A stretch of 63,954 nucleotides of DNA, the filler included, from Octopus bimaculoides (lineage: Eukaryota): assembly GCF_001194135.2 (NCBI RefSeq). It is 6 parts of 6 records of this genome, joined end to end, with 100 filler letters (N's around TTAATTAATTAA, not from the genome) between each part and the next. Parts side by side here need not be neighbours in the genome. Positions count along the whole stretch, not along the records: positions 39,633 to 62,689 come from NC_068983.1; 5 more parts are not named here. One strand, 5' to 3'. Positions 39,032 through 62,689 of this stretch are shown piece after piece. The position numbers and the translations under genes are program-made. Position 1 is the first letter of the stretch, and each line of letters starts with the position of its first letter. The notes beneath the pieces are model-generated. The model was not told the origin of the DNA and ran no database searches. It was given only the letters and a program-made list of their open reading frames with translations.

Positions 39032-41907
39032 TACTTCTTTACTACTATATCGCTATACATGTTATCTTAATCGATTTTTCTTTCTATCTAACAGCGTGTT
39101 TGTCTGTCTAACTATTTATCTATCTAGCTAGCTATCTATCTATCTATTCATCTATCTACCTCTCTATCTATCTATCTGTCTGCCTGCCTGTCTATCTGCC
39201 TGTCTGTGTAGCAAAACGACCCTTCTATATTCCTATTCATTTCCCTGCATTTTAGTCATACATCCATTTGCCTAAACGTCTATCAGCCTCTCTACACATA
39301 TAAGAATTGATTTAAGAGCATCCCCATCGATCACACATACATACACATACGCAAGCACGCACGTGCACACACACACACACACGCACCCTCGCACGCACAC
39401 ACACAAACATATGCATAGTCAGACACACATGTATATATAAATACACAAGCATAACAGTCTATCTATCAATTTAGATTGCTCTCTCTCTCTCACTCTCTCT
39501 CTCTCTCACTCTCTCTCTCACTCTCTCTCTCTNNNNNNNNNNNNNNNNNNNNNNNNNNNNNNNNNNNNNNNNNNNNTTAATTAATTAANNNNNNNNNNNN
39601 NNNNNNNNNNNNNNNNNNNNNNNNNNNNNNNNTATGGTCTTCTTTAATTGTCGATATTCTTTCACTTTTTTCTTTTAATATCATATTCACCATTTCAAAC
39701 AACCAGTGGGAACCTGAAAAATTAAATTGTCTTTACATAAAACAGGCGTATTTGTTGCTCGGCAAAGCAACATACAAGTTAGTTTAATAGTTAGTTTATA
39801 GCTAGTTGAACAGCCAAAGACATCAGATTCCAAAACATATATATATGCAGGGGCAGAATCTCGTCGTAAATCAAATATTTCTGTTACAATAAAACTATGA
39901 AAGTCTCCAACGCGCGCGTGCGCGCATTAACATACATTAACGCACGCGCAATGCAACAGGAATCCACAAGCAAATCTATAATGAAATAAGTGAATTCCCA
40001 GATAGATCTGATCAGCTGATTTGGTTCCAGACGATATTATTGCTGACAAAATGCGTTAACCAGAAAATATACGTTTAACGCCAACCACCAAATATAGTAG
40101 ATTTCATGCTTGAACGAATTTTATAAACCATGTAAACTGCAGAAGGATTTGTAAAGTTCTACGGAGCTATTCTGTAAAGTAACACTACAAAACTCAAGAT
40201 ATAAAGCACCTGTAACAGTATCAAGGAAATCCAGGATTGTACGAGATTTTGCAACAGAGCAGCATGAATCTTATATCTCTTTTATTTTCGATGTTGCTTA
40301 TCGTTGAACGTGTAAGTTGAAGTATAAACTACAGATTTCTAATCAGTTACTCGGGTAAATCGGCTGTCGAAAATAAAATGGAACCACTTTTTTGACAGCC
40401 TCAACTATGACATAAACCTTTTTCTCTACTGCAGGGATTTCTTTCTACGCTGAATTTATTCACTAATAAAGAAATGCTAAAGGCCTACAATTTGGACTTA
40501 CAATAGCCCCAATTGCGATCTCAGAGGGTAAACTGTTCATATTCTACTCTAGACTTGACAAACCCCGTAATAGCAGTGTTTTTGATTTGATTTAATTGCT
40601 GTTTAAGGGAATAAAATTGTTATACAAAATAAGGATTACTCATTAGCAGGGACAGGTATTTCTTTAAGTGAAATTGAAATTAGGGCAGGATGAGGACACG
40701 ATCCGTCTTGACTCAATTGAAAGCTAAAATGCAGACAGAATCAGCTAATAATTTACATTTACTTTTATACATTGCCATATTAGATTTACGAGCAAATTGT
40801 ATAAATTTCGATAAACTGATGGTACATTTCTCTTTGGTCTTTCAACATATGTTAAAATGATGTTAACTAGTATGCGCACATTCCACTTCGTTTTCTACAA
40901 ATATAATCATCGGAAAAGCTTACCATTGTTTGCAAAACTGAAACTAAAACGTTTAAACTAAAGCATCATAAAATCTTCGCTATAGTTTTTTATACACAAC
41001 TGATTCAGAGATAAAATTCTCAACGAGACCTTTTAGAGAAGTTTTTTTCAAACATCTGAGTCACCGATAGCTTTTTAAAAAAAAATTATTATTTATCTCT
41101 CTTCTTAAGGCGGCGAGCAGGCAGAATCGTTAGCACGCCATCAAAATGCTTAGTAGCATTTCTTCAGTCTTCGTGTTCTGAATTCAAATTCCACCGAGTT
41201 CAACTTCGCTTTTCATCCTTTCGGGGTCGTCGAAATAAGTATCAGTTACACACTGGGGTCGATGTAATCGACCAGTCTCCTCCCTCAAAATGTCAGGCCT
41301 TGTGCCTTTAGCAGAAAGGATTATCTAATAGTCTCTTTTAATTCAGGGAAATGTCGCAGACACAATAGAAGCGATCACGGGTTCTTTCGATAAATCCACA
41401 GGACTTACTTTGAAAAATGTCCCTTTTTTTTTCTTACACCTATTATGGCGAGTTTAATAATTCTCATGCAAATAATTCCTTTAATAGGACGCAGCTACAC
41501 AAGCACAAGATATCAATGTGTTTCAATTCTACGAACCTGAAAATTTTCTATAGTTATTTTCAAGACATAAGCCTCAAATTACAGTTGAATGCCGCTAAGC
41601 ATTTGTTCGATGTACTAAAAGATTCAACCAGTTCGTGTCTATAATAATCCTTTCCACTATAGTCACAAGGCCTGAAATTTTGGAAGGGGACTAGTTGATT
41701 AGATGCACCACAGTGTTCGACTTGTAGTTATTTTTTCGACCCAAAGAAGTTCAAATGCACAGGTGACAACAGCGTGATTTGATCTCAAAACGTAAAGTTG
41801 GAAGAAATGCTGCTAAGAACTTTGTTCGATGTGCTAACGAGTCTGTCAACTCACCATCTATAACAACCGCACATGAAAACAACTAAGTCATTAGCTTAAA
41901 ACATTAC

Positions 41908-42103
41908 CTGTTCCTGGGAAACTGCATATTAAAACATCATCAGTTCGAATTTTGAGTGAATTTAATTTCCCTAAATTCTCCACCACTATAGGTAAAGGAA
42001 CCATGTTGTGACCCTGATATTTATAAACGATAAATGATTTTCCAACTCTGTCATATAATTTAGTGAATCCATTATTTACTGTTCCGACAGTTTTGTTATC
42101 CAT
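41908..42103 (-). CDS. Cytosolic sulfotransferase, first coding exon (gene A, probable tandem paralog)
   Basis: ATG start. Encodes MDNK...KSFIVYKYQGHNMVP...LKIRTDDVLICSFPGT(G), followed by a CAG|GTAATG donor in phase 1. Matches the SULT N-terminus (RxDDvxixxYPKsG) and the phase of gene B exon 2. No downstream exons were found in the window. Confidence 0.88.
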
Positions 42104-43256: not shown

Positions 43257-44204
43257 ACCAGAAAGATATTCCAATTTTGTGCACCAAACCTAAATTTTCA
43301 GTTAAATCTCAAAATTCAGTTTGCAAGTGATTTCATTTGAGACCGCGTGTTGAAACTAAAACGATTGCAGTGTAACAAATATTGGTTTCAAATTTTTGGC
43401 ACAAGGCCAGCAATTTCAGAAGAGGTGAGCAAGTCGATTACATCGACTCCAGTGCTTAACTGCTACTTATTTTATCGACGCCGAAGGATGAAAAGCAAAG
43501 TCCCCCTCGGCGAAATTTGACCTCGTTGTGAAGATATATGCTAGCCATTTAAATCAAAGACTGATAACTTAAAGTTCATTATTTGTCATTTGGTATCAAA
43601 CAGGTCATTGATGTGATTACACTGTTAAGAATTCGAGGAGAAAAAGTGATAAAGGACAGAAAATAAGAAAAAGAAGTTAAAGACAAATTAGAAGGAAAGT
43701 AAAAGAAGGNNNNNNNNNNNNNNNNNNNNNNNNNNNNNNNNNNNNAGATACACCAGAAAGATATTCCAATTTTGTGCACCAAACCTAAATTTTCAGTTAA
43801 ATCTCAAAATTCAGTTTGCAAGTGATTTCATTTGAGACCGCGTGTTGAAACTAAAACGATTGCAGTGTAACAAATATTGGTTTCAAATTTTTGGCACAAG
43901 GCCAGCAATTTCAGAAGAGGTGAGCAAGTCGATTACATCGACTCCAGTGCTTAACTGCTACTTATTTTATCGACGCCGAAGGATGAAAAGCAAAGTCCCC
44001 CTCGGCGAAATTTGACCTCGTTGTGAAGATATATGCTAGCCATTTAAATCAAAGACTGATAACTTAAAGTTCATTATTTGTCATTTGGTATCAAACAGGT
44101 CATTGATGTGATTACACTGTTAAGAATTCGAGGAGAAAAAGTGATAAAGGACAGAAAATAAGAAAAAGAAGTTAAAGACAAATTAGAAGGAAAGTAAAAG
44201 AAGG
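43257..44204. other. Apparently identical ~455-bp duplication across a gap (probable assembly artefact)
   Basis: 43257-43709 matches 43748-44204 on either side of an N run. Confidence 0.8.
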
Positions 44205-48814: not shown

Positions 48815-48924
48815 TTAAAAAATATTCAAGTTTATTCCCTGCTCGAGGAGTTCCTTCTGAATTCGAGCGTCCATCCTTTCATTTTGAGCGACTGTCATCC
48901 ATTCTTTCCACGTAGAAACTTTTC
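48815..48924 (-). CDS. SULT gene B, terminal coding exon 5
   Basis: Polypyrimidine tract ctttttctcttttcag acceptor, phase 1. Encodes (G)KVSTWKEWMTVAQNERMDARIQKELLEQGINLNIF*, including the KxxxTVxxxE dimerization motif. Confidence 0.92.
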
Positions 48925-49644
48925 CTGAAAAGAGAAAAAGAATATTAGGTAACCATCGAAGAATTTAGTTGTATCTTTTCTATTTTCATTGTCACTATCG
49001 TCGTCGGGAGTTGGTACTAAAAGAAATAAATTTCTGGGTATTAATCAAGATACTTTATTATTTTCCGTTAACGGAAACTAATATCACAGGTATTAATATA
49101 AACTCTAATCCACTTATAGTGGACCTTTGTCTAAAACCCTCAATAGAAAACATCGAATGTTTATAGGAATATATATGTTTGTGTATAATTATTATAAGTA
49201 TCATCATCATCATCATCATCATCGTTTAACGTCCGCTTTCCATGCCAGCATGGGTTGGACGATTTGACTGAAGACTGGTGCAACCGGATGGCTACACCAG
49301 GCTCCAATCTAATTTGGCAGAGTTTCTACAGCTGGATGCCCTTCCTAACGCCAACCACTCAAAAAGAAAAATACGAACTATTGAAAAAATCCTACCTTCT
49401 CAACACACGTAATATGTATGTACATACGGGTATGTTTGTACGTAAATATATGTGTATGTATGTATATATGTGTATGTATGTATGTATATATTTTTATGTA
49501 TTCTTCATTTATGTACCTTTTCATTTGTACATAACTACAATAATCTTAAGATATATTGTTTTTATATTCCACTATTATTTCTCTTTTGATAACTTTCTCC
49601 TTCCTCTGTTTATACATTATCTAATAAGAATAATATATCACATC

Positions 49645-49678
<34 letters not shown>

Positions 49679-49848
49679 TGATTCCTTGGTATGCATATAC
49701 ATATACATATACAAATACATATGAATATAAACATATAGAAATATATGTGCATATGTTCATGTATGTTTATGTGTACGTATGTATATGTATAAGTGTGTAT
49801 ATGTGTATGCATTTGTATTTATAACTTAACCTTATGAACTTTCTAAAC

Positions 49849-49968
49849 TCTCTGACGAAGTCTAGAGACACAGCCAAGTACTGAAATCTTATCTACCAAA
49901 TACTTAAGTTCACTGAAGGGATATATAGATTGGGGTACTTTGGTCTCTTGGCTGAAACAGCTATAAGA
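49849..49968 (+). ncRNA. Type I hammerhead ribozyme, same family as 45023-45158
   Basis: Stem I TCT/AGA, CTGACGA, stem II AGTCTAGAGAC/GTCTCTTGGCT (10 of 11 pairs), GAAA, CAGCTA-TA (one change from CAGCTG). The upstream tract matches the 45 kb copy (tgaact...aaa.tctctga). Confidence 0.7.
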
Positions 49969-50699
49969 TATTATCCTATCTTTTGTGATCTACGTTATAT
50001 ATTTTAATAATTACTGATATTTTTATATATTGTATATGTAAAGCATATTATGCTATACATGTATGTATGTTGTTATAATGGTTAAATAAATAAATAAATA
50101 AATAGACATAATATAATGTCTAACAGTTGACGAATACCACCTCTTGATCCCCTCCATTTTTTTATTGCACCGATTTTTTTGGCTACTTAAAGCTGCATAA
50201 CTTTTTTCTATCAAATATTTTTTAACGAGGTCTTCATCAAACGATTCTACTCGTGGAGTTTTTAAATAGTCATAATTAAAGTATAGTTTTTCTTTTAAAT
50301 AACTGAGAAATTACGAGTTAAGGCAAATAATAGGCGTTACTCTCCCATTCTTTGCCCTACATTTTTTTATCATAACTTTTTTCTACTGAACCAAATTTCG
50401 ATTTTTTATGTCAAAATGTAGCTTACCATTGGTCCACTATAGAGCAAAAAAAAAAAAAAATTAAGATTGAGTTAAAACGGAATTAGTGATAAAGCGTTAC
50501 ACTGGTCGCGTATGAGTAAAAGTTAGAAACAACAAATTATCATTTTTATTTTCATCACTTAAAACCATTGGTTACCTTTTATTCGCTCTCTGTACAGTGA
50601 TCAGCGCCGTCCAACCAATGCGCGTGACCGTCCAACCAATGGCGTGATGTTATGTGTCCTTGAGGGACACGCGCATATAAAATTCGCCGTGTGCTCATT

Positions 50700-52482
50700 A
50701 ATAAATGACAGTTGTTTGTTTGGTTTCTGGTGCTCAACCTGCTCAAACGTCATCTTGAGATGAAACATGCAGACAAGAAGGACCAAGATTAGAATTACTT
50801 CCAGCGACTTGGCGAGAAAGTAAAGCGGCAGCACATAAACAAGACTGGCCAAATCTACCAGAAGAGGGCAGGAATTGTGGAAGCATCCTATGAAGTTGCT
50901 CTCCTGGTGGCCAAAAACATGAAGGCACATACCTTTGTAGAGTCTTTCGTCATGCCAGCGGCAAAGATCATGGTCATTCACGTGATTGGAGAGGAGACGG
51001 CGATGAAGTTGGAGAGTGTTTTCGTCTCTAGCAACACTGTACAACGACGTATCGAGGAGATGTCGGTCGACATTGCCGATCAAGTGATTGAGGGAGTGAG
51101 AGCCTTAAAGTATGGGTTTGCCATTCAACTCGACGTCACCAACTGCTGTCAACTACTTACCTACGTCCGCTGCACGCAGAATAATGCTGTGAAGACTGAG
51201 TTACTGCTGAGCCAGGAGCTGTCCAGTACAACGAAAGGAAAGGATATTTTCGACGTTTTGCACAATTTCTTCAAACAGAATGAACTGGATTGGGGAAAGT
51301 TGGTCGGATACCCGACAGATGGGGCTCCATCTATACTCGGTCGAAAGTCAGGTTTTCAAGCTCATGTGAAAGCTGCGTCACCAAACGCCACTACTGTCCA
51401 TTGTTTCATACACAAATTCACCCTTTGTGCTCTCTCTGAAGTTTTAATCAGGCTTGAACCGAGTTATCAGAATCGTGAATTTCGTTAAAACATCGGCTCT
51501 GAATTCTCGGCTGTTTAAGCTGCTCAGTGAAGATTTCGGCTCCGATCACATCTGTCCCCTCCACCACACAGAGGTTCGCTGGCCCTCACAGGGTAATGCG
51601 ACGAGGCATCTCTTTGAACTGAGGAATGAACTTCTTGTTTTCTTCACGGAGAAGGAACACGATTTTCAAAAAGATCTGGTGGACGAGGAGTTTATCTCAA
51701 TGTTAGCCTACCTGTCGGACATTTTTGGAGCCCTCAACTCCTTAAATCTATCGTTTCAAGGACCCAACTGTATTGTCACAGAGTTCATCTCGAAGCTGGG
51801 AGTATTTGTCCGAAAGTTGGATCTATGGTTGAAGGACGTGGAGAGCAAACGCCATGGAATGTTCGAACTCCTGTCTACACTTGATAGGGAGCCCAATGAT
51901 GAATTTGCCCAAGAAATCGCTCGTCACCTCTCACTATTCAAGACTGAGTTGATGCATTACTTCCCGGATGTGACATAGTGCGTCTTCATCGCCAATCTAT
52001 TCTCCGTTGATCCAGCCGAGTTGCCTGTCGGGACCGGGGAACAAGAGGAACTGACAGATATCCAGGCTGAAGAGACAGCAAAGAAGAAGCAAAAAGAATG
52101 CTCTCTTATAAACTTCTGGCTAAGCATGGTCTTCTCCTACCCGACGCTACTGATTTTCCCCTCTCTGTGGGAGTGTGAGTAGGGGTTCTCAACCTTACTG
52201 GCCACCAAGTCGAAGAGCCGGAACCGTCTTGTTGCGCTCGGCCATGATTTCCTATGCGCTGTGAGCAAGGTTATGCCCCGCATTGACCAGCTGGTGGAGA
52301 GGACACAGGTTCAGCCCTCGCATTAAATTGAGTTGTGTTCTTTGTTGTTAGTTCATTTATGTTTGCTACTTATGATTAAATTGATATCTGATCGAATTGA
52401 GTTTTAATGGAACCAGGTGGTACGCGGCGGCTATACGAAGCCTCCAAGTGGTACGCAATCACAAAAAGGTTGGGAACCACTG
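50700..52482 (+). mobile_element. hAT (Buster/Charlie, ZBED5/FAM200-like) transposon, frameshifted
   Basis: ORFs 50877-51488 and 51454-51978: EASYEVALLVAK..KAHT..E, FAIQLD, TDGAP, HCFIH, LHHTEVRW, LAYLSDIF. Right TIR ggttgggaaccactg at 52468-52482. Confidence 0.92.
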
Positions 52483-53175
52483 TCTTAAAGTAACTGCGAT
52501 GACAGACTTTTAATAGCCTTCCTCAACAGGTCCCATCCAATCTATATCACTATCCCAGACAATTTCGCCTGTCTATATTCTTTCTTTCCTTTTTCTAATA
52601 CCCTTCCCTCCCATTAAATTTAATGTAATCTAATTTTTCCTCTACCGGTCTCATACTATCCATATCTGTCCCATTTACTTTTCCTTGATAAAAAAATTTT
52701 CTGTTTTCTTCCTCTCCTGTCTACAGTATATATATATATATATATATACACACACATACATTATTTGCTATGAATATTTAATAATAAGGACAATCGTAGC
52801 GATGCTTCATTCCCTAATTGAATCGGGAAAATAACAACTTGACCGACCAAACTCAAAATCATTAACGAGACACCACTTTATGTATAAATGTACCTGTTGT
52901 GACCCAGACTAGAAAATTGATGCAGCCCAATATGATACACATCATCCCTTTCATAAAGGACAGACTTCTGTTTACTTAATCGATTATATATATACATATA
53001 TATAGTTGAGATTTACAGAAAAACAAAATACGAAGACAGGTGTATAAACAACGCACGGGAAGGTGAGAAAATCTTATACGTTTCGAGCTTACGTTCTTCA
53101 ACAGAAAGGAACCCGAGGAAATAAACAGAGAGAGAGAATAAAAAATCTTTTGGAGCTAGCGGTCGATCATGACGT

Positions 53176-53360
53176 GTGTCTGGGAAGAGTCATTTTCTTT
53201 TAGTGCCTTATTATTTAATACACTGATTTATTTTTTCTAAACTTTTCGTTGCCTCTTGCAACCTTTCAATAGTTGTTGACTCTGTTCGTTATCAGAGCTG
53301 CGTCCTTTTTGTTTGTTTGTTTATGCGCCTGTGTGTGGGTGAGTATGCATGTGTATACGC

Positions 53361-53391
<31 letters not shown>

Positions 53392-53873
53392 TGTATGTAT
53401 GTATGTATGTATGTATGTATGTATGCATGTATGCATGTATGCATGTATGTTTGTATGGGTGTATGTATGTATGTATGTATGTATGTGTGTGTATGCCTGT
53501 ATGTGTATGCATGTGTGTGCGTTTGTATGTATGTATGTATTCTACATATTCATGTTTGTGTTCATGCTTGTGTATTCATGTTTGTATGTGTGTGTGCATA
53601 TACAAACGTACACACATGCATATATATACGCATACACATACATGCATACACAGGCATACATACATAAGTGTATACACATGCACACTGAAGCACACACATG
53701 CACACAAAACAAAAGGAACGCAGCTCTGATAACGGACAGGATCAACGACTATTGAAGAGGTCGCAAAAGGCAACGAAAATTTGAGAAAAAATAAATAAGT
53801 AAATGAATGGAAATCGAACCAGTGAGTGTGTTAAATAATAAGGCACTAAAAGAGACTGACTCTCCCCAGATAC
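53176..53873. repeat. Inverted repeat (arms 53176-53315 and 53706-53873) around an (ATGT)n tract
   Basis: The arms are reverse complements. A further copy of the arm is at about 7752-7925. Confidence 0.8.
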
Positions 53874-53934
53874 AAAAAAATATGCATCAACACACGAATT
53901 CACGTAAAGAATCTTGTAAACCAAATACAAAAAC

Positions 53935-53980
<46 letters not shown>

Positions 53981-55368
53981 TAGNNNNNNNNNNNNNNNNN
54001 NNNNNNNNNNNNNNNNNNNNNNNNNNNNNNNNNNNNNNNNNNNNNNNNNNNNNNNNNNNNNNNNNNNNNNNNNNNNNNNNNNNNNNNNNNNNNNNNNNNN
54101 NNNNNNNNNNNNNNNNNNNNNNNNNNNNNNNNNNNNNNNNNNNNNNNNNNNNNNNNNNNNNNNNNNNNNNNNNNNNNNNNNNNNNNNNNNNNNNNNNNNN
54201 NNNNNNNNNNNNNNNNNNNNNNNNNNNNNNNNNNNNNNNNNNNNNNNNNNNNNNNNNNNNNNNNNNNNNNNNNNNNNNNNNNNNNNNNNNNNNNNNNNNN
54301 NNNNNNNNNNNNNNNNNNNNNNNNNNNNNNNNNNNNNNNNNNNNNNNNNNNNNNNNNNNNNNNNNNNNNNNNNNNNNNNNNNNNNNNNNNNNNNNNNNNN
54401 NNNNNNNNNNNNNNNNNNNNNNNNNNNNNNNNNNNNNNNNNNNNNNNNNNNNNNNNNNNNNNNNNNNNNNNNNNNNNNNNNNNNNNNNNNNNNNNNNNNN
54501 NNNNNNNNNNNNNNNNNNNNNNNNNNNNNNNNNNNNNNNNNNNNNNNNNNNNNNNNNNNNNNNNNNNNNNNNNNNNNNNNNNNNNNNNNNNNNNNNNNNN
54601 NNNNNNNNNNNNNNNNNNNNNNNNNNNNNNNNNNNNNNNNNNNNNNNNNNNNNNNNNNNNNNNNNNNNNNNNNNNNNNNNNNNNNNNNNNNNNNNNNNNN
54701 NNNNNNNNNNNNNNGAGATAATAGAAATAATTAAGAGTGATTAGTAACATGCATGCATATAACAAAAATGAATGAGAGTATATGAATATCATGCAACATA
54801 AATTTCTGATTTATTGAAATTATCTCTGCTCCAGGGAAAATATAGTAACTGCACAATGTCAACTGAGAAACGAGAAAGGGAGATAATTTCAAGAATCAAG
54901 AATTCTCCGAAATTAATATGCTATTAATGGAAACAGAATTTGATTGTTTGGTGACAAGAGAACAGATGGGAATATGTATGTGTTTCTATAACTTGAGAGA
55001 ACTCATCAACTCAGTTGTAGTCCTACCTTGTCTCCAGCAGAAACGAGTTGAACATCTTTATAGAAAATGATTTAAGAGAAATAATTGAGATTGGCAAGTG
55101 GCATCTATTTGAGCAACAAAGACGAATAAAGAGATATTAAATGTCATATACACGTGTATATACACGCATACATATACACATATATATTCATAAAAACACA
55201 CACAAGCACATACATGTACATACACATGCACATACATACACATGCACATACATACACATGCACATACATACACATGCACATACATACACATGCACATACA
55301 TACACATGCACATACATACACATGCACATACATACACACACATCTATATCTTGAAACTGAATACTCAC

Positions 55369-55546
55369 CTGAACGAAAAAATCCACTGTTATCTTTGAAA
55401 TCTACTTTGAGGACATTTTCTTTAATAGATGGTTTCTCGTTTTTCATTCTGTCAAAGGTGCACATATCTGCAATATCTTTAGTCAGTTGCTCATCAATTT
55501 TCTTGCCAAGAAATTTTGCAATCAATGATACGATTTTAACAAGGTC
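55369..55546 (-). CDS. SULT gene B, coding exon 4
   Basis: gaacag acceptor and GTGAGT donor. 178 bp, phase 0 to 1. Encodes DLVKIVSLIAKFLGKKIDEQLTKDIADMCTFDRMKNEK...SGFFRS(G), matching SULT IAxFLG...SFxxMK...FFRKG. Confidence 0.95.
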
Positions 55547-55882
55547 CTGTTCAGAAGATAATACATATATATTAAACTAAACTTTCACTTTATGTTTCTT
55601 CTTGTCATACATTTAATCATCACATATTTGTTACACAGATAGCTTGCTTGATATATTGCTTTGTTAATTCTTTATACTTTTTCTTTAAATTGCCCTTTAC
55701 TTAATTGTTCTTGTGGTCGTTATGCTCAACGTCACCCTTCATTAAACAGATCTATGATCAAAAGTGTTCCACTCGTGACCAATCTGCCCTTTTTTTTAGG
55801 TATAGATTATATAAGATCATATTATCCGAATGTATCATCTTGTTTAAACCGTTGGCCGTTATTTGATGAACATTTTACTACA

Positions 55883-56700
55883 ATTGGGTTGGCAACTAAG
55901 TTCCCGCCGTTTTTTAAAATTTAAATTTTTCAAATACTAATTGTTAAAAGCAGGAATCGTAAAAGATAAATTACTTATAAAACAACAATTAATTAATCAA
56001 TAATATATTCCCCCTTATTGTTTACAATTTCTTCCTAACGTTCAACAAGATTTTCAATACCTCGTTGGTAGAAATCACCCGATTTCAACTCAAAAAATTG
56101 ATCCAACCAAGCTCACAATTCTGCATCAGTATTGAACGAAACTCCGCGCATAACATTTGAAAGAGATCGAAAGAGGTGGAAATCTGTTGGTGCCAAATCA
56201 GGAGAGTACGGCGGGTGTGGCAGCACTTTCCACCCATGTGTTTGAATGGCTTTCTTGGTCATATTGGCGAGATGAGGGCGGGCGTTGTCGTGCAGCAGAA
56301 GAACTCCACGCTGTTGATTAGGTCTTTTCTCTTGAATAGCCGTGTTGAGTCGTTCCATCTGTTGAACATAGAGTTCCGCATTGACCGTTTGGTTCTGTTC
56401 AAGCGATTCATAATGGATGATCCTTTCCCAGTCCCACCATACGCACAATATCGTTTTACGCGGATGAAGATCTCGTTTCACGCGCAGTGTCGCTTGTTTA
56501 CCGGGGCTAAGCCATTCTTTACGCTGCTTCATATTGATGTACAGGCACCACTTTTCGTCGCCAGTAACGATTCGGTAAAGAAATCGTTGCTTGTGTCNNN
56601 NNNNNNNCATATTGATGTACAGGCACCACTTTTCGTCGCCAGTAACGATTCGGTAAAGAAATCGTTGCTTGTGTCCATGAGTTGAGCGGTGACGAGCAAG
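55883..56700 (-). mobile_element. mariner (DD34D) transposon, 5'-truncated
   Basis: RIVTGDEKW, WWD, LLHDNARPH and HPPYSPDLAPTDFHLF. TIR ttgggttggcaactaagt at about 55884-55901. Confidence 0.92.
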
Positions 56701-57743
56701 CAAATCAGTGGAGATTGTTGCTCGTTGATTTTTGTTGTTGATTTTTGTTTCGGTAGAGGCGGTCCGTCCCGGGCGGCACTTTTGGGTCTGTTGTATGCAA
56801 TATGTGTTTTTTGTGTGGTCCAGGGGTGGCAAATGGAAGGGCCGCACCGGGCGGCATACACTCTAGCTATTCTAGTGCCGACACAAAATATCTCTGAATA
56901 TTAACACAAGTTAAAAGACGTAAAAGATGGACTTCATAATTTAAAATATGATTTAGTATTCCATTTTATAGCTGGTTTAACTATTTTGCTACACTAGTCG
57001 GCCTGAGCTGAGAAAATATTCTATTTAATGAACTGCATCAAAATAAAAAAAAACAAAAATACTAATTCTTAATAGCAGGAATCGTAAAAGATAAATTACT
57101 TATAAAACAATGTATTGTTAGAAATGCTATAGAATGTACGATGTGGGTGTTAGGAAAAGAATTAATCAAAAACTTAGAGAAAAGTATTGTAATATACTTC
57201 GAAAGAATAAAGATGAGGCAGAATACAACGAATCATTTAGTATTTCAAAAGGAATTAAAGGCAATTAGGAGTAATTATTGTGTTCTATTATAAATGTCAG
57301 TAAAATACCGTTGTATTTATGATAGTTTTCCTGATAGTTTTTTTAAAAATTCTTTTTTGAGTTTAGGTTATTTTTCTGAGTTTGTTATGGGGGTTTCCTA
57401 AAAATCTCATTGGTAGTCGTGATCCAAACTGCCCTATTACACTCCGTTATATGATAAATCACTGAAAGTAAATGAACTGAGATTCTCAACTAGGCTTGGT
57501 ATGGAATATTTAGACTTCTTGTTATTCGACCGTCTGACAGCTTGGCCGATTAGACTCAACCTCCATACGCAATAACATTAGTCATAAAAATCGCTGTAGT
57601 TAGCCAAAAGAAAGCAACGCTGCAGAAGCACTTATACTAGTGAAAAAGGAATGATATATGAAAGTAAAGAGAAAAAATAATAAAGAGAAGAATGAGACAG
57701 TGGTAAGAAGTAGAGAAAAAAAAGATAGCTATGTAACACCTAC

Positions 57744-57841
57744 CTTCGAAGCCTCTTCATATGTTATTATGAGAACATTGGGGTTGTCTTTGATTACTGA
57801 CCACCACTGTCGAGTGTATTCAAAATAATCACCCCTGGGGA
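57744..57841 (-). CDS. SULT gene B, coding exon 3
   Basis: ttacag acceptor and GTAGGT donor. 98 bp, phase 1 to 0. Encodes (V)PRGDYFEYTRQWWSVIKDNPNVLIITYEEASK, matching the SULT GxWxxHxxxWW...VLxxxYE segment. Not reported in the ORF track. Confidence 0.92.
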
Positions 57842-58695
57842 CTGTAACGACGTTAAGAGGGAAAAGAATCAGAAAATTGAATTTGTTCACAATTAATGTT
57901 TACATTGTGGGACTATCCATTCTTTTGAAATTGAAAATTTTTTACTACCCTATAAAAATCATTTATCAAGAAAAGTTATTTATCAAATGTCAATTTATTA
58001 ATCCAGATTCGTATATTGGGTTGTAATGACACTTTTGAAGACTTTTTATCTTCATATAAGAAATATTTCTTGAACTTAAAGAATCTTTAAGCGCCAGTGT
58101 TTTGCACCAGTATATAAGCTGTATATCCTGTCAATGGTTTGGATACTTATTTCAGATTGCAATAGCAAATTGAGATGAAAACAGTTAAGTGTTTTGCTTA
58201 AATATACACTGAGACGCTAGAAGTGGATGTATATTAAAATCAATGGGAAGGTAACCTAATATCATAATGTTTTTCCGAAAGGCATTAGTGTGTGAATAGG
58301 AATGTTTAGTTTGGAAGTGCATTGGATCCTTAACGCGCCACAGAAACTATGTCATTCAGTTGAGGAATACATTTCTGATTTCCTCACCAACTTGATAAGT
58401 TNNNNNNNNNNNNNNNNNNNNNNNNNNNNNNNNNNNNNNNNNNNNNNNNNNNNNNNNNNNNNNNNNNNNNNNNNNNNNNNNNNNNNNNNNNNNNNNNNNN
58501 NNNNNNNNNNNNNNNNNNNNNNNNNNNNNNNNNNNNNNNNNNNNNNNNNNNNNNNNNNNNNNNNNNNNNNGTCTAAGTTGTTTTTTAACCACGAAATCTT
58601 TCCTTTGCACTATAACAATTTCATTGTCTCTTCTACGGCCCAACGGGTTACGATATTTACCTAACTGACAATTCCCTGACTTAAACATGACTTAC

Positions 58696-59013
58696 CGTTT
58701 CCGTCCATGAACATCTCAAAGAAACTGTGGAAGTTCCCATCATACTGAATTAAGTCAATACTCCACATATGTCTGTAATAGGAAACTACCACAGACTTAG
58801 GGTTACGCGCGATGAAAATGATTTTGTTATTCTTAAGTAATACTTCAGGCAAAACATTAGGGTGTAAGTGTGTGTTGAGCACCCTTGGAGATGGTTTTGA
58901 ATCTAGTTGATCTTTAAGCATGTAGTCTATCATATTTTCTTCTTTAATACTGGGAATTCTTTCAGCTTTTCCATTGACGACCATACTCGTTACCTCCCAG
59001 ATCCAGTGGGTTC
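58696..59013 (-). CDS. Cytosolic sulfotransferase (SULT family) gene B, coding exon 2
   Basis: AG acceptor at 59015-59014 and GTAAG donor at 58695. 318 bp, phase 1 to 1. Encodes (G)THWIWEVTSM...PSPRVLNTHLHP...IIFIARNPKSVVVSYY...MFMDGN, with the catalytic His (THL) and the 3'-PB motif (RNPxxxxVS). Confidence 0.95.
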
Positions 59014-59639: not shown

Positions 59640-61960
59640 CGTTCTTATTAGAGACTCTTCTGTTGCTACTAATATTTATCCAGCTGTCCTTATATTTCTT
59701 GTTTCTTTAATAAAAATCAAAATTATATTTAAAATCTCTTTAATAATGTTAGTTTTTACCTGTATCCCATGGGGAATTATTAGCCATATTTTCTTCTTCT
59801 TATTATTATTACTATGAGGTTTTTTGTTCATATTACTACCTATCTCTGGCTTTAGGTGATTCTGAATACTGTGTTTATCATAATAGAAGGTGCATTCATC
59901 ATTTAAGTTATCTTTTAAATCATAATTATATTTAGAATTGTTGAAAAATTTAATATTATGATTATATCCCACCTTATGAAGCGCTTCATTATAATATGGT
60001 GCATGTTTATTGAATATCTCATAGTTGGAAGAAAGTACTGAAATTCTTTTCTCTATATTATTTACTAATGCTTTCTTAATAGAAGGTGGATGGTTACTCT
60101 TAGCGTTAATATATTTCAGGTTTTTGTTAATTTTATGGTAAGGTTGGGTTATACCTGTTATTAAGTTGAAATTTACATCTAAGTAGTTGACATTGCTATA
60201 TTCGTTATAAATTGTAATCCTAAGCCCATTTCTTTTAAAGAAACTGTGTATTTTCTTCTTATATATTTCTAAAGTACTATTCGTGCTATTTTTTGTTATT
60301 AGCAGGAGGTCATCTCTGTATAATCCACCCTCTAATTTAAGATTTTCTAATTGGAGTTCTGGTAATAAATAAATTCCTACTAGGTCTGTAACCTGAGCAG
60401 AGTCTGGTGCTCCCACAGGGATATCAAAAAAGTCCCTGGTATCTTTTCTGTCCCACAATTTATCATTGTACCTAATAAACGATTTTCCCACCATTTTTAC
60501 TACCTTAACTTCTTCCTCTTTAGTCATTCCCGCCTTATTCATAGCATATATTAAGGCCTTATTAAGCACTATTTCATTAATAGATGAATAATAATCCTCT
60601 ATGTCTATTTGGATAAATTTGTAACTACTACTGTCTTTAATATCTTTAAACCATTTTAAAGTATTATTAGTGCTAGTCCAGAGTTTCAGGTAATTTAGGT
60701 TATTTAGTTTATTAATATATTTGTCTAAAATTAACTAACTTAATTTCCCTAAATCAGATTTACTGGGACATATTAGTCTTACTTTAGGGTCCGAGTAGAA
60801 ATTGTCTTTATGATCCTTTAAAGTTACCCTAGGGTGCATCGGTACATATGGTTCCATTTTATTGTCTATCTCATATTTTTCCATGATTAACTTAGTGGCT
60901 TTATTAATATTATAAATGGTATCTTCCGGGACAATTTTATATTTTTTATTTATTTCCTTTCCTAAAAGTTTATCATATAATTTTGTATCTAACTTATACA
61001 GGTTGCCAGTTTTATCAGATTGTACGACTATTCCCTCGACATTACGCATTTCTTTTATGTTGATTCCTAAGTATTCATTATGTCTGTTTGGGTATTTTTA
61101 AAACTTAATGTTTTTAACCACCTTCCAAATTTTGTCTTCCTGAGACTGAATTTCCCTGTTATATGGGGGTTCCCTTTTAGTTTTAAATTTAGAGCATATA
61201 TAATTGGTATTCTCCACATCTTTAATGTTGGGAATGTTACAGTTCTTATAGTGAGCTATCAATTTTATTCTATTAATAAACTCCTTTATATTATTAATAA
61301 GTTTAATGGTATATTCCCTTTTAGATGGAATGGGGATGTCATTCAATGAAGAGTCCCAGATTAGTGGTTCACTCCTACCTGTAAGTTCCATAATAAACGA
61401 AAATTGAAGGTAAAACCTAAAACAATAGTCGTATTATAAATATATTTAAAAGTATTATAGTAATAATATTAGGGAATAAAAAATGTATTCCAGCCTTACA
61501 GACAAAAATCGGTATAGTATTATACCGGGTTTCCTAATATATAATATATATTATATAACTAATTTAGAGACGAACCACCACTCTACAACTCAGTCAACTC
61601 AGAACCTGTCCAAATCCATGCTGTGAGGCATATACCATCTTAATATATCTAAGATTTTAATCTAAAAATTTAAATTTAATAATATATTACATAGATAAAT
61701 CATATAGATCATATAAATAAATTATAGACATATTAATTTTAAAAAAATTTTAAAGTCAAATTTATAAATTGGACAGTAAAAATTAATACGATAATATACA
61801 ATATGTAAGTATAAATGTAAAAGGTTAGTGCTAGTACATAGACTACGCGCGTTTCATGGCTGAAATAGGACTATATAAAATCATAAGCAAATTCTATCCG
61901 AGTTCATAAGAACGGGGAAATGATTTTACTCCCAAAATCAGTCACTCTTCAGGTCAAATC
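59640..61960 (-). mobile_element. Penelope-like retroelement, RT region with 5' pseudo-LTR, degraded by stops/frameshifts; no endonuclease seen
   Basis: ORF pieces 61098-61391, 60735-61049 and 59676-60569 carry IPIPSKREY, VVQSDKTGNLY, TLKDHKDNF..P.VRLICPSKS, FIQIDIEDYY, FDIPVGAPDSAQ, GGLYRDD, YLDVNFNL and SNHPP. These are PLE RT motifs. Confidence 0.9.
61841..61955 (-). ncRNA. Type I hammerhead ribozyme in the 5' pseudo-LTR of a Penelope-like element
   Basis: Stem I GAC/GTC, CTGAAGA, stem II GTGACTGA/TCAGCCAT (one mismatch), GAAA, palindrome ACGCGCGT. Predicted cleavage after UA at 61844, about 450 nt upstream of the RT ORF start. Confidence 0.78.
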
Positions 61961-62080: not shown

Positions 62081-62444
62081 ACTCGTCCACCTTCGTATGT
62101 TTCCGTAGAATTTATCAAATTAGAAAACGCAAATTTAATATAAAAATATATTTTCTGAAATTGCAAATTATTTAAAATATAAAAATATAATTTTCAACAG
62201 AGAGAATTTATCAAAATAGAAAACAAATGAAGTTTGAAGTTAAGTTTAAAAATAAATGTGATACTTATGCTCCGTAGATACTTATACTCTGTAATGTTTC
62301 AAATGCATGGATACAGGTGTCGAATTTGTTTCAATAACTTTCCGAAGATTTCGTCCTTAAATTCATAACGCCACATAAATTCAATGAGATGCGATTGAAG
62401 TAAATTTTGGGCTGTTCCATTTGCTCTTTTGTTGCAATTCTTTA

Positions 62445-62689
62445 CATACATTTGAATGGTCAAGTAGCTGCTTCAGGACCCAGTCATAATGCTGCAGGAG
62501 CTGCGTGAGGCAGCTTCTACCTGGACGGAAACCATGCTGGGTCTCATTCAGCAAGTCATTTTCTTCTAGGAACGCAATCAATCTCTTTCTGACAATTCGT
62601 TCCATGACTTTGCTAATATGTGAAGTCAGAGAGATGGGCCTGTAGTTCCCAGCCTCTGCTCTGCTTCCGCCTTTATGGATAGGACATAT
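62445..62689 (-). mobile_element. CR1/L2-type LINE reverse transcriptase fragment
   Basis: GNYRPISLTSHISKVMERIV...QHGFRPGRSCLTQLL. Confidence 0.85.

What the first reader, a model, noticed from the sequence alone, without database searches (positions are those of the whole stretch)
41908..42103. Sulfotransferase exon lacking the invariant PAPS-binding lysine (FPGTG instead of YPKSG)
Seen: codons TTC CCA GGA ACA G|. Gly (GGA) is two substitutions away from Lys (AAA is one from GAA or AGA but two from GGA), so a single base-call error is unlikely, and the ORF is intact. Established: the Lys of the 5'-PSB loop (K47/48 in SULT1E1/1A1) contacts the PAPS 5'-phosphate and stabilises the transition state. 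Inference: a catalytically altered or dead SULT, possibly co-opted as a ligand-binding or structural protein, as cephalopods did with GST (S-crystallins) and ALDH (omega-crystallin).
Basis: partly seen in the sequence, partly recalled or inferred. Interest (0 to 1): 0.7.

Follow-up and report, generated by a model that had tools for sequence, protein, structure and literature searches.

The report
Octopus sulfotransferase gene lacking catalytic lysine
This is the first coding exon of an octopus sulfotransferase-family gene with glycine where relatives carry a catalytic lysine, but every named octopus, argonaut and cuttlefish protein of this branch lacks that lysine too, so it is an old family trait whose effect on enzyme activity is untested.

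Summary
On the minus strand, an intact 66-codon first coding exon (42103..41908) ends TTC CCA GGA ACA G|GT. It splices in phase to a second exon (from 39713) that the piece edge cuts off, giving the loop SFPGTGSHW where canonical enzymes have TYPKSGTTW.

The missing lysine is not special to this exon. In 15 of 15 full-length relatives of one clade the position holds T, A, C, S, G or Y. Eleven of these are named (Octopus, Argonauta, Acanthosepion); four are unnamed transcript contigs. In 135 of 135 other close relatives it is K (127) or R (8). The lysine-less proteins form one clade (bootstrap 70/100). A firefly-squid enzyme that keeps the lysine lies outside it.

Within the clade, the catalytic His, R130, S138, W53, Y193, F229 and G259 are invariant. 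Two members occur as spliced transcripts. The neighbouring paralogue has dN/dS of about 0.34-0.39.

I read this as a member of an old, expanded cephalopod sulfotransferase subfamily with a remodelled cofactor site, probably still binding PAPS. Activity is untested. Nothing supports the crystallin-style co-option idea. Whether this particular gene is complete or expressed cannot be told, because the rest lies outside the piece and no orthologue was found.

The parts
41908..42103 (-). Gene B, first coding exon: ATG at 42103, 65 codons plus the first base of codon 66, phase-1 donor. Encodes MDNK...ICSFPGT(G).
   Evidence: tblastn to cephalopod SULT N-termini at E=3.7e-12
41912..41914 (-). GGA codon: Gly64, at the position of the 5'-PSB lysine (Lys48 of SULT1A1/1E1).
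   Evidence: position mapped to solved structures through P0012
39714..41907 (-). Gene B intron 1 (2194 nt), GTAATG...TTTTTCAG. Contains a dispersed repeat at about 41105-41324.
39633..39713 (-). Gene B exon 2, first 81 nt only (cut by the piece edge). GT completes Gly66, followed by SHWLFEMVNMILKEKSERISTIKEDH.
   Evidence: 65-69% identical to the exon 2 start of P0012/P0009/P0010/P0088
58696..59013 (-). Gene A (upstream tandem paralogue; orthologue of O. sinensis 'sulfotransferase 1A2', P0001), exon 2: (G)THWIWEV...MDGN. Its exon 1 lies beyond the piece.
57744..57841 (-). Gene A exon 3
55369..55546 (-). Gene A exon 4, ending ...FFRSG (RSG in place of the canonical RKG).
48815..48924 (-). Gene A last exon: (G)KVSTWKEWMTVAQNERMDARIQKELLEQGINLNIF, then the stop codon.

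Best explanation
The exon is the first coding exon of 'gene B'. Gene B is a tandem-arrayed member of a cephalopod subfamily of SULT1-like cytosolic sulfotransferases. In this subfamily the lysine of the 5'-phosphosulfate-binding (PSB) loop was probably lost once, in the ancestor of the clade. That ancestor predates the split between octopods and cuttlefish. The position has drifted among small or neutral residues since then; Gly is the state in gene B and in several octopod paralogues.

Shown:
- the exon, its splice junction and its loop sequence;
- the clade-wide absence of a basic residue, against K or R in all 135 other relatives;
- a single clade in a neighbour-joining tree (moderate support);
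- invariance of the other catalytic and PAPS-contact residues;
- spliced transcripts of two clade members;
- dN/dS below 1 for the neighbouring paralogue;
- a confidently predicted normal SULT fold for a Gly-bearing member.

Inferred: the proteins still fold as sulfotransferases. They probably still bind PAP(S) through the PSB-loop backbone, W53, R130, S138 and R/H257-G259, and they still use His108 on an acceptor hydroxyl. I think they most likely remain PAPS-dependent sulfotransferases with a remodelled, probably slower or pH-shifted, transfer step.

The loop histidine (G-[TS]-H-W) is invariant in the clade. It occupies the same loop position as the catalytic His48 of mouse SULT2A8, and it is the best candidate for what made the loss of the lysine tolerable.

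My split: about 0.9 that this is a first exon of a member of the lysine-less clade; about 0.65 that gene B itself is a functional gene; about 0.5-0.55 that the clade is catalytically active.
For: - Exon, junction and loop.
- Family identity: Pfam PF00685 for gene B (22.2 bits) and gene A (175.6 bits); homologues named sulfotransferase in Octopus, Argonauta and Acanthosepion.
- Census at the lysine column: 0 of 15 basic in the clade, against 127 K plus 8 R in 135 others.
- Names: every named lysine-less protein is from a cephalopod. The named K-bearing ones are from bivalves, gastropods, a chiton and Lingula (also a sea star and spiders), plus one from Watasenia.
- Neighbour-joining tree: the lysine-less proteins form one clade, bootstrap 70/100 (78/100 without P0036); the Watasenia K-bearing protein lies outside.
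- P0036 has lost only the lysine and keeps RNPKD, RKG and GDWKN, so the lysine probably went first.
- G50, W53, H108, R130, S138, Y193, F229, G259 and W264 are each 15/15 in the clade; the loop His is 15/15.
- Gly at this position also occurs in P0012, P0088 and an Argonauta gene at L012:2700-2482.
- The exon 1/2 boundary and its phase are conserved across the loci examined.
- P0013 and P0014 are uninterrupted ORFs on 1.1-1.3 kb Logan contigs, which means spliced mRNA.
- Gene A dN/dS is 0.34 against O. bimaculoides and 0.39 against O. sinensis.
- The P0012 model has pLDDT 88.4, a normal strand-loop-helix at the PSB loop, and TM 0.75-0.85 to SULT1A3/1E1/1B1/1C2.
- Precedent from mouse SULT2A8 (PMC8134075): His48 in KSGTH48W lies 4.7 A from the PAPS sulfonate, and the K44A mutant keeps 10-30% activity at pH 5.5.
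Against: - Only 92 residues of gene B are visible. Its catalytic His, 3'-PB motif and stop codon lie outside the piece.
- No orthologue of gene B was found. The best matches are 42-51% identical. Nothing lies within 10 kb downstream of the gene A orthologue in O. sinensis or Argonauta, or in the O. bimaculoides locus, which holds many Ns.
- The family contains pseudogenes.
- In the same SULT2A8 paper, K44A has no detectable activity at pH 7.5 and is not stabilised by PAP. A lysine-less site may therefore bind the cofactor poorly.
- Several other cofactor-site positions changed together with the lysine: D134, K258, G262 and D263, and R257 to His in the subgroup closest to gene B. That pattern also fits loss of the canonical function.
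- The dN/dS values rest on few substitutions (6.5 synonymous, 9.5 nonsynonymous) and are only moderately low.
- The tree is neighbour-joining with moderate support.
- No clade-specific gained basic residue could be tied to the active site.
Confidence: 0.6

Rival explanations
1. Pseudoenzyme. The lysine-less clade has lost sulfuryl transfer. It persists as PAP(S)-binding or small-molecule-binding, regulatory or structural proteins, and gene B is one of them.
For: - The lysine column is basic in 135 of 135 other relatives and 0 of 15 in the clade.
- The residue at that position varies freely (T/A/C/S/G/Y), as expected once the constraint is gone.
- K258, D263, G262 and D134 changed as well, and R257 became His in the SHW subgroup.
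- SULT2A8 K44A is inactive at pH 7.5 and is not stabilised by PAP.
- The fold and many binding residues are retained, as in ligand-binding pseudoenzymes.
Against: - The catalytic base His108 is 15/15 conserved although nucleotide binding does not need it. S138, R130, W53, Y193, F229 and G259 are also 15/15.
- SULT2A8 K44A keeps 10-30% activity at pH 5.5 when the loop His is present, and that His is 15/15 in the clade.
- No data on lens or other very high expression were found.
- No named octopod protein in the sample keeps the lysine. If octopods sulfonate small molecules, these proteins are the candidates. This is a weak argument, because the sample is limited to the best 150 cluster representatives.
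Confidence: 0.3
2. Gene B is a pseudogene or an unexpressed relic. An intact-looking 5' end is left over from tandem duplication, and the rest of the gene is broken or missing.
For: - The rest of the gene is outside the piece.
- No orthologue or identical protein was recovered.
- No exon-B-like sequence lies downstream of the gene A orthologue in O. sinensis, Argonauta or the O. bimaculoides locus.
- A frameshifted exon-2 copy exists in the O. bimaculoides cluster.
- Exon 1 is only 33-41% identical to any other first exon, while exon 2 is 65-69% identical to SHW-type exons.
Against: - 92 codons across two exons are open, with an ATG at the homologous position, a GT donor, a polypyrimidine-AG acceptor and the conserved phase.
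- All 14 invariant or near-invariant family positions in this stretch are kept.
- The two word-index searches that found nothing also missed P0012, which shares SERISTIKE with the query. Their negative result is therefore weak.
Confidence: 0.35
3. Artefact: a base-call or assembly error, or a chance ORF that only resembles a sulfotransferase exon.
For: The piece has many N runs and duplicated blocks flanking gaps.
Against: - No N run lies within or next to the exon.
- Homology E-values of 1e-9 to 1e-12 across two exons in phase.
- The same non-lysine state is seen in independent assemblies of four cephalopod genera and in transcript contigs.
Confidence: 0.02

Closest known systems
Canonical cytosolic sulfotransferases, SULT1 family (human SULT1A1/1A3, SULT1E1, SULT1C2, SULT1B1; Pfam PF00685)
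   Same: - Same fold: the P0012 model has TM 0.75-0.85 to these structures, with sequence E-values of 1e-34 to 1e-38.
- Same strand-loop-helix PSB element, with G50 and W53.
- Same intron position after PxxG (known for vertebrate SULT1 genes from memory).
- Catalytic His108, R130, S138, Y193, F229, G259 and the KxxxTVxxxE dimer motif are present in clade members.
   Different: - Lys48 is replaced by G/A/T/S/C/Y in all 15 clade members.
- K258 of the RKG motif is mostly Ser.
- GDW of the GxxGDWKN motif is mostly (S/A/D)TW.
- D134 of RNPKD is often A or S.
- T52 is His.
- For gene B only the PSB loop can be seen.
Mouse SULT2A8 (PDB 7EOV; PMC8134075)
   Same: - A SULT that departs from the canonical catalytic set.
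- Its PSB loop reads KSGTH48W, with the His at the same loop position as the His of cephalopod G[TS]HW.
- That His lies 4.7 A from the PAPS sulfonate and takes part in catalysis.
- K44A retains 10-30% activity at pH 5.5.
   Different: - SULT2A8 keeps the lysine and has lost His99 (equivalent to His108). The cephalopod clade keeps His108 and has lost the lysine.
- The correspondence of the two His residues rests on motif register (K+4), not on a structural superposition done here.
SULT4A1 (PDB 1ZD1), the orphan brain SULT
   Same: A conserved SULT-fold protein with an atypical cofactor site and no established activity (from memory). It appears among the structural matches.
   Different: - To my memory it keeps the PSB lysine and differs elsewhere in the site.
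- It is a single-copy vertebrate gene, not an expanded tandem family.
- It is no closer in sequence than other SULTs.
Tyrosylprotein sulfotransferase, and the 8 Arg-bearing relatives in the sample
   Same: They show that the PSB position tolerates a different residue.
   Different: The replacement there is Arg, still basic (8 of 135; TPST from memory). No non-basic natural replacement was seen outside the cephalopod clade, apart from two truncated fragments.
   Same: A cephalopod lineage, an expanded enzyme family, and changed active-site residues.
   Different: No evidence here of lens expression or of very high abundance. The active site is far less degenerate than a fully inactive one would be. 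Literature searches found no link.

Membership tests
Cytosolic sulfotransferase (Pfam PF00685 Sulfotransfer_1) | Sequence match to the family profile at or above the gathering score | tested here: met
   Gene B, 92 aa: 22.2 bits against a cut-off of 22, E=1.1e-4, residues 55-90 (marginal, because only the first 35 profile positions are present). Exon 1 alone gives no hit. Gene A: 175.6 bits.
Cytosolic sulfotransferase (Pfam PF00685 Sulfotransfer_1) | 5'-PSB loop with a basic residue (Lys48; PKSGTTW) | tested here: not met
   Gene B reads FPGTGSHW, with Gly64 at the Lys position. The position is 0/15 basic in the clade and 135/135 basic in other relatives.
Cytosolic sulfotransferase (Pfam PF00685 Sulfotransfer_1) | Remaining PSB-loop elements: Gly50, Thr/Ser51, Trp53, and a strand-loop-helix | tested here: met
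   Gene B has G66, S67 and W69. The P0012 model shows strand 70-74, a loop, and helix 80-92 with pLDDT above 90.
Cytosolic sulfotransferase (Pfam PF00685 Sulfotransfer_1) | Catalytic base His108 | not testable with these tools
   For gene B this residue lies beyond the piece edge. It is present in gene A (NTHLH) and in 15 of 15 clade members.
Cytosolic sulfotransferase (Pfam PF00685 Sulfotransfer_1) | 3'-phosphate-binding residues: Arg130, Ser138 and the Arg257-Lys258-Gly259 motif | not testable with these tools
   These lie outside the piece for gene B. In the clade, R130 is 15/15, S138 15/15 and G259 15/15; R257 is Arg in 12 and His in 3; K258 is kept in 4/15. Gene A has RNPKS..VS and RSG.
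Cytosolic sulfotransferase (Pfam PF00685 Sulfotransfer_1) | SULT fold | tested here: met
   Tested on P0012, the closest annotated full-length relative, not on gene B itself: pLDDT 88.4, pTM 0.87, and Foldseek TM 0.75-0.85 to human SULT1 structures.
Cytosolic sulfotransferase (Pfam PF00685 Sulfotransfer_1) | PAPS-dependent sulfuryl transfer | not testable with these tools
   This needs recombinant protein and an assay.
Lysine-less cephalopod SULT clade (defined here) | A non-basic residue at the Lys48 position, followed by x-G-[TS]-H-W | tested here: met
   Gene B has P-G-T-G-S-H-W. Clade members have P-[TSCAGY]-x-G-[TS]-H-W.
Lysine-less cephalopod SULT clade (defined here) | Closest relatives are clade members; phase-1 intron after PxxG | tested here: met
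   The 19 best BLASTP hits all belong to lysine-less clusters (P0088, P0009, P0010, P0012...). The same exon boundary is seen in L002-L007 and L012. No tree was built for gene B itself because only 92 aa are available.
Enzyme-crystallin / recruited structural protein | Very high tissue-specific (lens) expression | not testable with these tools
   No expression data are available. Literature searches gave nothing.

The most novel reading that the evidence does not exclude
An old, tandemly expanded and expressed clade of cephalopod SULT-fold proteins works without the 5'-PSB lysine, which is K or R in all 135 other close relatives sampled. Either it catalyses sulfuryl transfer by a non-canonical arrangement, with the PSB-loop histidine and His108 and no Lys48, or it has become a family of PAP(S)- or ligand-binding proteins. 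Either outcome would be a natural experiment on what Lys48 is needed for. The probability below is for the first outcome, an active enzyme with a non-canonical mechanism.
Probability: 0.4. Interest if true: 0.7.

Novelty: new variant of a known kind. Interest (0 to 1): 0.5.

Why it matters
Lys48 of the PSB loop is treated as part of the catalytic set of sulfotransferases. According to PMC8134075, it mediates cleavage of the sulfonate-PAP bond and is positioned by Ser138. In the 135 non-clade relatives sampled here it is always K or R.

A whole cephalopod branch has done without it since before octopods and cuttlefish diverged, yet keeps the catalytic His and most PAPS contacts, has multiplied in tandem arrays and is transcribed. 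This is a ready-made test of how far that lysine is dispensable and what can stand in for it.

It also bears on annotation. These genes are currently named 'sulfotransferase 1A2/1E1/1C4/1B1' by similarity, and transcriptome studies read them as steroid-sulfating enzymes (for example the octopus optic-gland study). That assumes an activity that has not been shown.

For this single exon the result is more modest: it is one more member of that branch.

Tried and rejected
- **Exon-only and 92-aa word-index protein searches** found nothing. The index also missed P0012, which shares SERISTIKE with the query, so I do not treat this as evidence of absence.
- **Further gene B exons between 39633 and 41908:** only the exon 2 start at the very edge.
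- **A motif regex for gene A's last exon** (GDW/DWK) failed because the clade has STWKEW. tblastn then found the exon at 48924-48815.
- **Search for a gene B orthologue** in six places, with none found:
  - the O. bimaculoides gene A locus (L001, 38% N);
  - the O. sinensis locus (L005);
  - the Argonauta locus (L012);
  - two further O. bimaculoides clusters, at 147.2-147.3 Mb and 157.1 Mb (L002-L004, L007);
  - a second O. sinensis locus (L006).
- **Exact look-up of P0006** was not on record.
- **Search for a compensating basic residue gained in the clade.** Candidates were R85, K256 and K266 (P0001 numbering). Basic residues at 85 and 266 also occur in K-bearing relatives, and none of the three could be placed at the active site. 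Rejected as evidence.
- **Literature** on cephalopod, octopus or squid sulfotransferases, pseudo-sulfotransferases, Lys48, and a crystallin link: no report of the lysine-less clade.
- **Sequencing-error reading:** rejected, because independent assemblies and transcript contigs show the same state.
- **Pfam scan of five other ORFs in the piece** gave no hit.

Full report
**1. The observation**

The feature is on the minus strand. An ATG at 42103-42101 opens a reading frame of 65 codons plus one base. It encodes MDNKTVGTVNNGFTKLYDRVGKSFIVYKYQGHNMVPLPIVVENLGKLNSLKIRTDDVLICSFPGT(G). The frame ends TTC CCA GGA ACA G, followed by the donor GTAATG at 41907. An in-frame stop lies five codons upstream of the ATG.

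A polypyrimidine-AG acceptor (AG at 39715-39714) is followed by GT TCC CAC TGG TTG. This completes the split Gly codon and continues SHWLFEMVNMILKEKSERISTIKEDH, up to the piece edge at 39633. The loop therefore reads S-F-P-G-T-G-S-H-W. The canonical 5'-phosphosulfate-binding (PSB) loop is T-Y-P-K-S-G-T-T-W.

Exon 1 alone gives no Pfam hit. The 92 residues of exons 1 and 2 together reach the gathering score of PF00685 (22.2 bits against 22). tblastn of cephalopod sulfotransferases against the piece finds exon 1 at E=3.7e-12 and exon 2 at E=4.9e-9.

**2. Surroundings**

On the same strand, 6.7 kb upstream, ends a second sulfotransferase gene, which I call gene A.
- Its exons are 59013-58696, 57841-57744, 55546-55369 and 48924-48815. 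All have GT-AG introns.
- Its first exon lies beyond the piece. In O. sinensis the corresponding exon 1 is 9.3 kb upstream of exon 2.
- Gene A is 95% identical to an O. bimaculoides protein and 89% identical to O. sinensis 'sulfotransferase 1A2'.
- The window aligns to O. bimaculoides chromosome CM046603.1 at 123.16 Mb with 93-97% nucleotide identity, introns included. Synonymous divergence (dS) is 0.059.

The piece therefore comes from an Octopus species close to, but not the same as, the O. bimaculoides assembly sampled. The gene B exon is the start of the next gene in a tandem pair.

**3. Relatives and the lysine**

Every named cephalopod homologue of gene A lacks the PSB lysine:
- YPTAG, YPTSG and YPSCG (Octopus, Argonauta);
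- YPCCG (Acanthosepion);
- YPAAG, FPAAG and HPGAG (O. bimaculoides).

Scallop, abalone, whelk, Lingula, sea-star and spider homologues all have PK[SACT]G.

A profile search of 1.84 billion cluster representatives returned the 150 closest families. I aligned the 163 sequences of at most 400 residues (the hits plus the two window genes). Among the full-length ones, the lysine column holds K in 127 and R in 8 of the 135 sequences outside the cephalopod cluster. It holds T, A, C, S, G or Y in all 15 full-length members of the cluster. The only other exceptions are two truncated fragments.

Cluster look-ups name the additional lysine-less proteins:
- P0035 (Tyr at this position) is from Argonauta.
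- P0036 (Ala) is from Argonauta, O. sinensis, O. vulgaris and O. bimaculoides.
- P0088 (Gly) is from O. bimaculoides.

Four of the 15 lysine-less members (P0011, P0013, P0014 and, within the P0036 cluster, some Logan members) come only from unnamed Logan transcript contigs, so their source organism is inferred from similarity.

The K-bearing clusters I looked up are from bivalves, gastropods, a chiton and Lingula. One is from a cephalopod: a Watasenia scintillans sulfotransferase with YMKSGCHW, RKG and GDWKN.

In a neighbour-joining tree the lysine-less proteins form one clade nested among molluscan K-bearing enzymes. Bootstrap support is 70/100, or 78/100 without P0036. The Watasenia protein falls outside.

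The simplest reading is a single loss in a cephalopod ancestor, before octopods and cuttlefish split. Tandem expansion followed. O. bimaculoides has clusters at 123.2, 147.2-147.3 and 157.1 Mb of one chromosome.

Gly at this position recurs in three places: P0012, P0088, and an Argonauta gene that lies head-to-head with the gene A orthologue (YTYPGAG, L012:2700-2482).

**4. What else changed and what did not**

I mapped positions to solved structures through P0012. Its HPGAGSHW aligns to YPKSGTTW of SULT1A3 and to YPKAGTTW of SULT1C2.

Residue counts in the 15 full-length clade members:

| Position | State in the clade |
|---|---|
| G50, W53, H108, R130, S138, Y193, F229, G259, W264 | kept in 15/15 |
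| Lys48 | basic in 0/15 |
| Lys258 | kept in 4/15 |
| Asp263 | kept in 1/15 |
| Gly262 | kept in 3/15 |
| Asp134 | kept in 6/15 |
| Arg257 | Arg in 12, His in 3 (the three form the 'SHW' subgroup that gene B's exon 2 resembles) |

P0036 has lost only the lysine, so the lysine probably went first.

The position equivalent to Thr52 is His in 15/15 clade members and in 113 of the 135 others.

An AlphaFold model of P0012 is confident (pLDDT 88.4, pTM 0.87). It shows the normal strand-loop-helix at the PSB loop. It matches human SULT1A3, 1E1, 1A1, 1B1 and 1C2 at TM 0.75-0.85.

**5. Are these genes alive?**

- P0013 and P0014, both lysine-less, are uninterrupted 302-317-codon ORFs on 1.1-1.3 kb Logan contigs from sequencing runs. 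Genomic copies of this family carry multi-kilobase introns, so these contigs are spliced transcripts.
- Gene A has dN/dS of 0.34 against O. bimaculoides and 0.39 against O. sinensis. The counts are small: 6.5 synonymous and 9.5 nonsynonymous differences in the first comparison.
- Gene B itself keeps all 14 invariant or near-invariant family positions in its visible 92 residues.
- Against this, the family contains pseudogenes: a frameshifted exon 2 lies at L004:3259-3466.
- No orthologue of gene B was recovered. The best matches are 42-51% identical.
- Nothing resembling exon 1 lies within 10 kb downstream of the gene A orthologue in O. sinensis or Argonauta, or in the N-rich O. bimaculoides locus.
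- The two word-index searches that returned nothing are weak negatives. They also missed P0012, which shares a nine-residue word with the query.

**6. Mechanism**

What is shown: the sequence, the clade-wide pattern, the conserved remainder of the site, the predicted fold, and transcription of relatives.

What is inferred:
- The proteins still bind PAP(S) through the loop backbone and through W53, R130, S138 and R/H257-G259.
- They still use His108. That residue is not needed for nucleotide binding, so its invariance points to continued chemistry on an acceptor hydroxyl.

Mouse SULT2A8 offers a concrete precedent (PMC8134075). Its PSB loop is KSGTH48W.
- His48 lies 4.7 A from the PAPS sulfonate and takes part in catalysis.
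- K44A retains 10-30% activity at pH 5.5.
- K44A has no detectable activity at pH 7.5.
- The K44A/H48T double mutant is dead.
- K44A is no longer stabilised by PAP.

The cephalopod loop histidine sits at the same register (K+4). I propose that this pre-existing lophotrochozoan histidine made the loss of the lysine tolerable. The price would be a slower, pH-shifted or weaker-binding enzyme. This is a hypothesis, not a result.

The main rival is that the clade is a family of non-catalytic binding proteins. This fits the correlated changes at K258, D263, G262 and D134, and the behaviour of SULT2A8 K44A at neutral pH. I put 'still catalytic' at about 0.5-0.55 and 'pseudoenzyme' at about 0.3. The remainder covers other chemistry.

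**7. Comparison with the known, and novelty**

By fold, profile and most site residues these are SULT1-like cytosolic sulfotransferases. By the defining basic residue of the PSB loop they fail the canonical test. I therefore file the clade as a new variant of a known kind, and gene B as one member of it.

Database records name these proteins sulfotransferase 1A2, 1E1, 1C4 or 1B1. Seven literature searches found no description of the missing lysine. The library searched is limited to open-access papers and preprints.

The crystallin analogy has no support here.

**8. Verdict**

Interest is moderate, 0.5. It is ordinary as a single exon. It is notable as a pointer to a lysine-less cephalopod clade that biochemistry could test directly.

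Noticed in passing
window 48815-59013 (-): Gene A's last exon lies 6.4 kb downstream of exon 4; in O. sinensis the same intron is about 0.9 kb. The annotated O. bimaculoides model (P0002, 242 aa) starts inside exon 2, reads through the exon 4 donor into a TG/CA microsatellite, and lacks the last exon. That model looks mis-annotated.
   Followed up: partly
window 56116-56862 (-): A mariner-type transposase remnant (Pfam Transposase_1, E=7e-22; DDE_3) lies inside gene A intron 3. The 22-residue stretch HKQRFLYRIVTGDEKWCLYINM is duplicated on both sides of the 10-N run at 56598-56607, which looks like an assembly gap artefact.
   Followed up: partly
window 50600-52200 (+): A block of 45-47% G+C in a background of 29-36% carries two long ORFs (203 and 174 aa). 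It lies inside gene A intron 4 and is absent from the O. sinensis intron, so it is probably a recent transposon insertion. It gave no Pfam hit at E<=0.01.
   Followed up: partly
window 59679-61433 (-) and 62381-62605 (-): Long AT-rich ORFs (352, 120 and 111 aa) lie upstream of gene A exon 2. A short ORF there carries a QHGFRPGRSC motif, which by eye looks like a LINE reverse transcriptase. Two of these ORFs (the 352-aa one and the short one) were scanned against Pfam and gave no hit, so their identity is unverified.
   Followed up: partly
window 43347-43520 and 43842-44015 (+): Two identical 57-codon ORFs lie 495 bp apart, flanking the N run at 43710-43745. This is either a tandem repeat or a gap-closure duplication. 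The same sequence matches dispersed repeats in the O. sinensis locus.
   Followed up: no
L004:3259-3466 (= L002:~22329), O. bimaculoides CM046603.1, about 147.249 Mb: A frameshifted copy of a SHW-type exon 2 (SHWMLEIANMILKEKS / KRVSLIKEDMLTDWAPIEKL...) lies between annotated sulfotransferase genes. It is a pseudogene fragment in the tandem cluster.
   Followed up: partly
window 41908-42103 versus 39633-39713: Gene B looks mosaic. Its exon 1 is closest to gene-A-type first exons (41% and 39% to P0001 and P0003, against 33-35% to the SHW type). Its exon 2 start is SHW type (65-69% against 42-50%). This could reflect gene conversion between tandem neighbours or an early-branching lineage. The sequences are too short to decide.
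   Followed up: partly
L012:2482-2700 (-), Argonauta hians BAAFZT010000014.1: A SHW-type sulfotransferase gene with YTYPGAG (Gly at the lysine position) lies head-to-head, 7.3 kb from the Argonauta orthologue of gene A. The neighbourhood differs from the tail-to-head pair in the window.
   Followed up: partly
P0051 (Watasenia scintillans BBB86724.1): This is the only named cephalopod protein in the sample that keeps the PSB lysine, RKG and GDWKN. It falls outside the lysine-less clade. Whether octopods have an orthologue of it was not established.
   Followed up: partly
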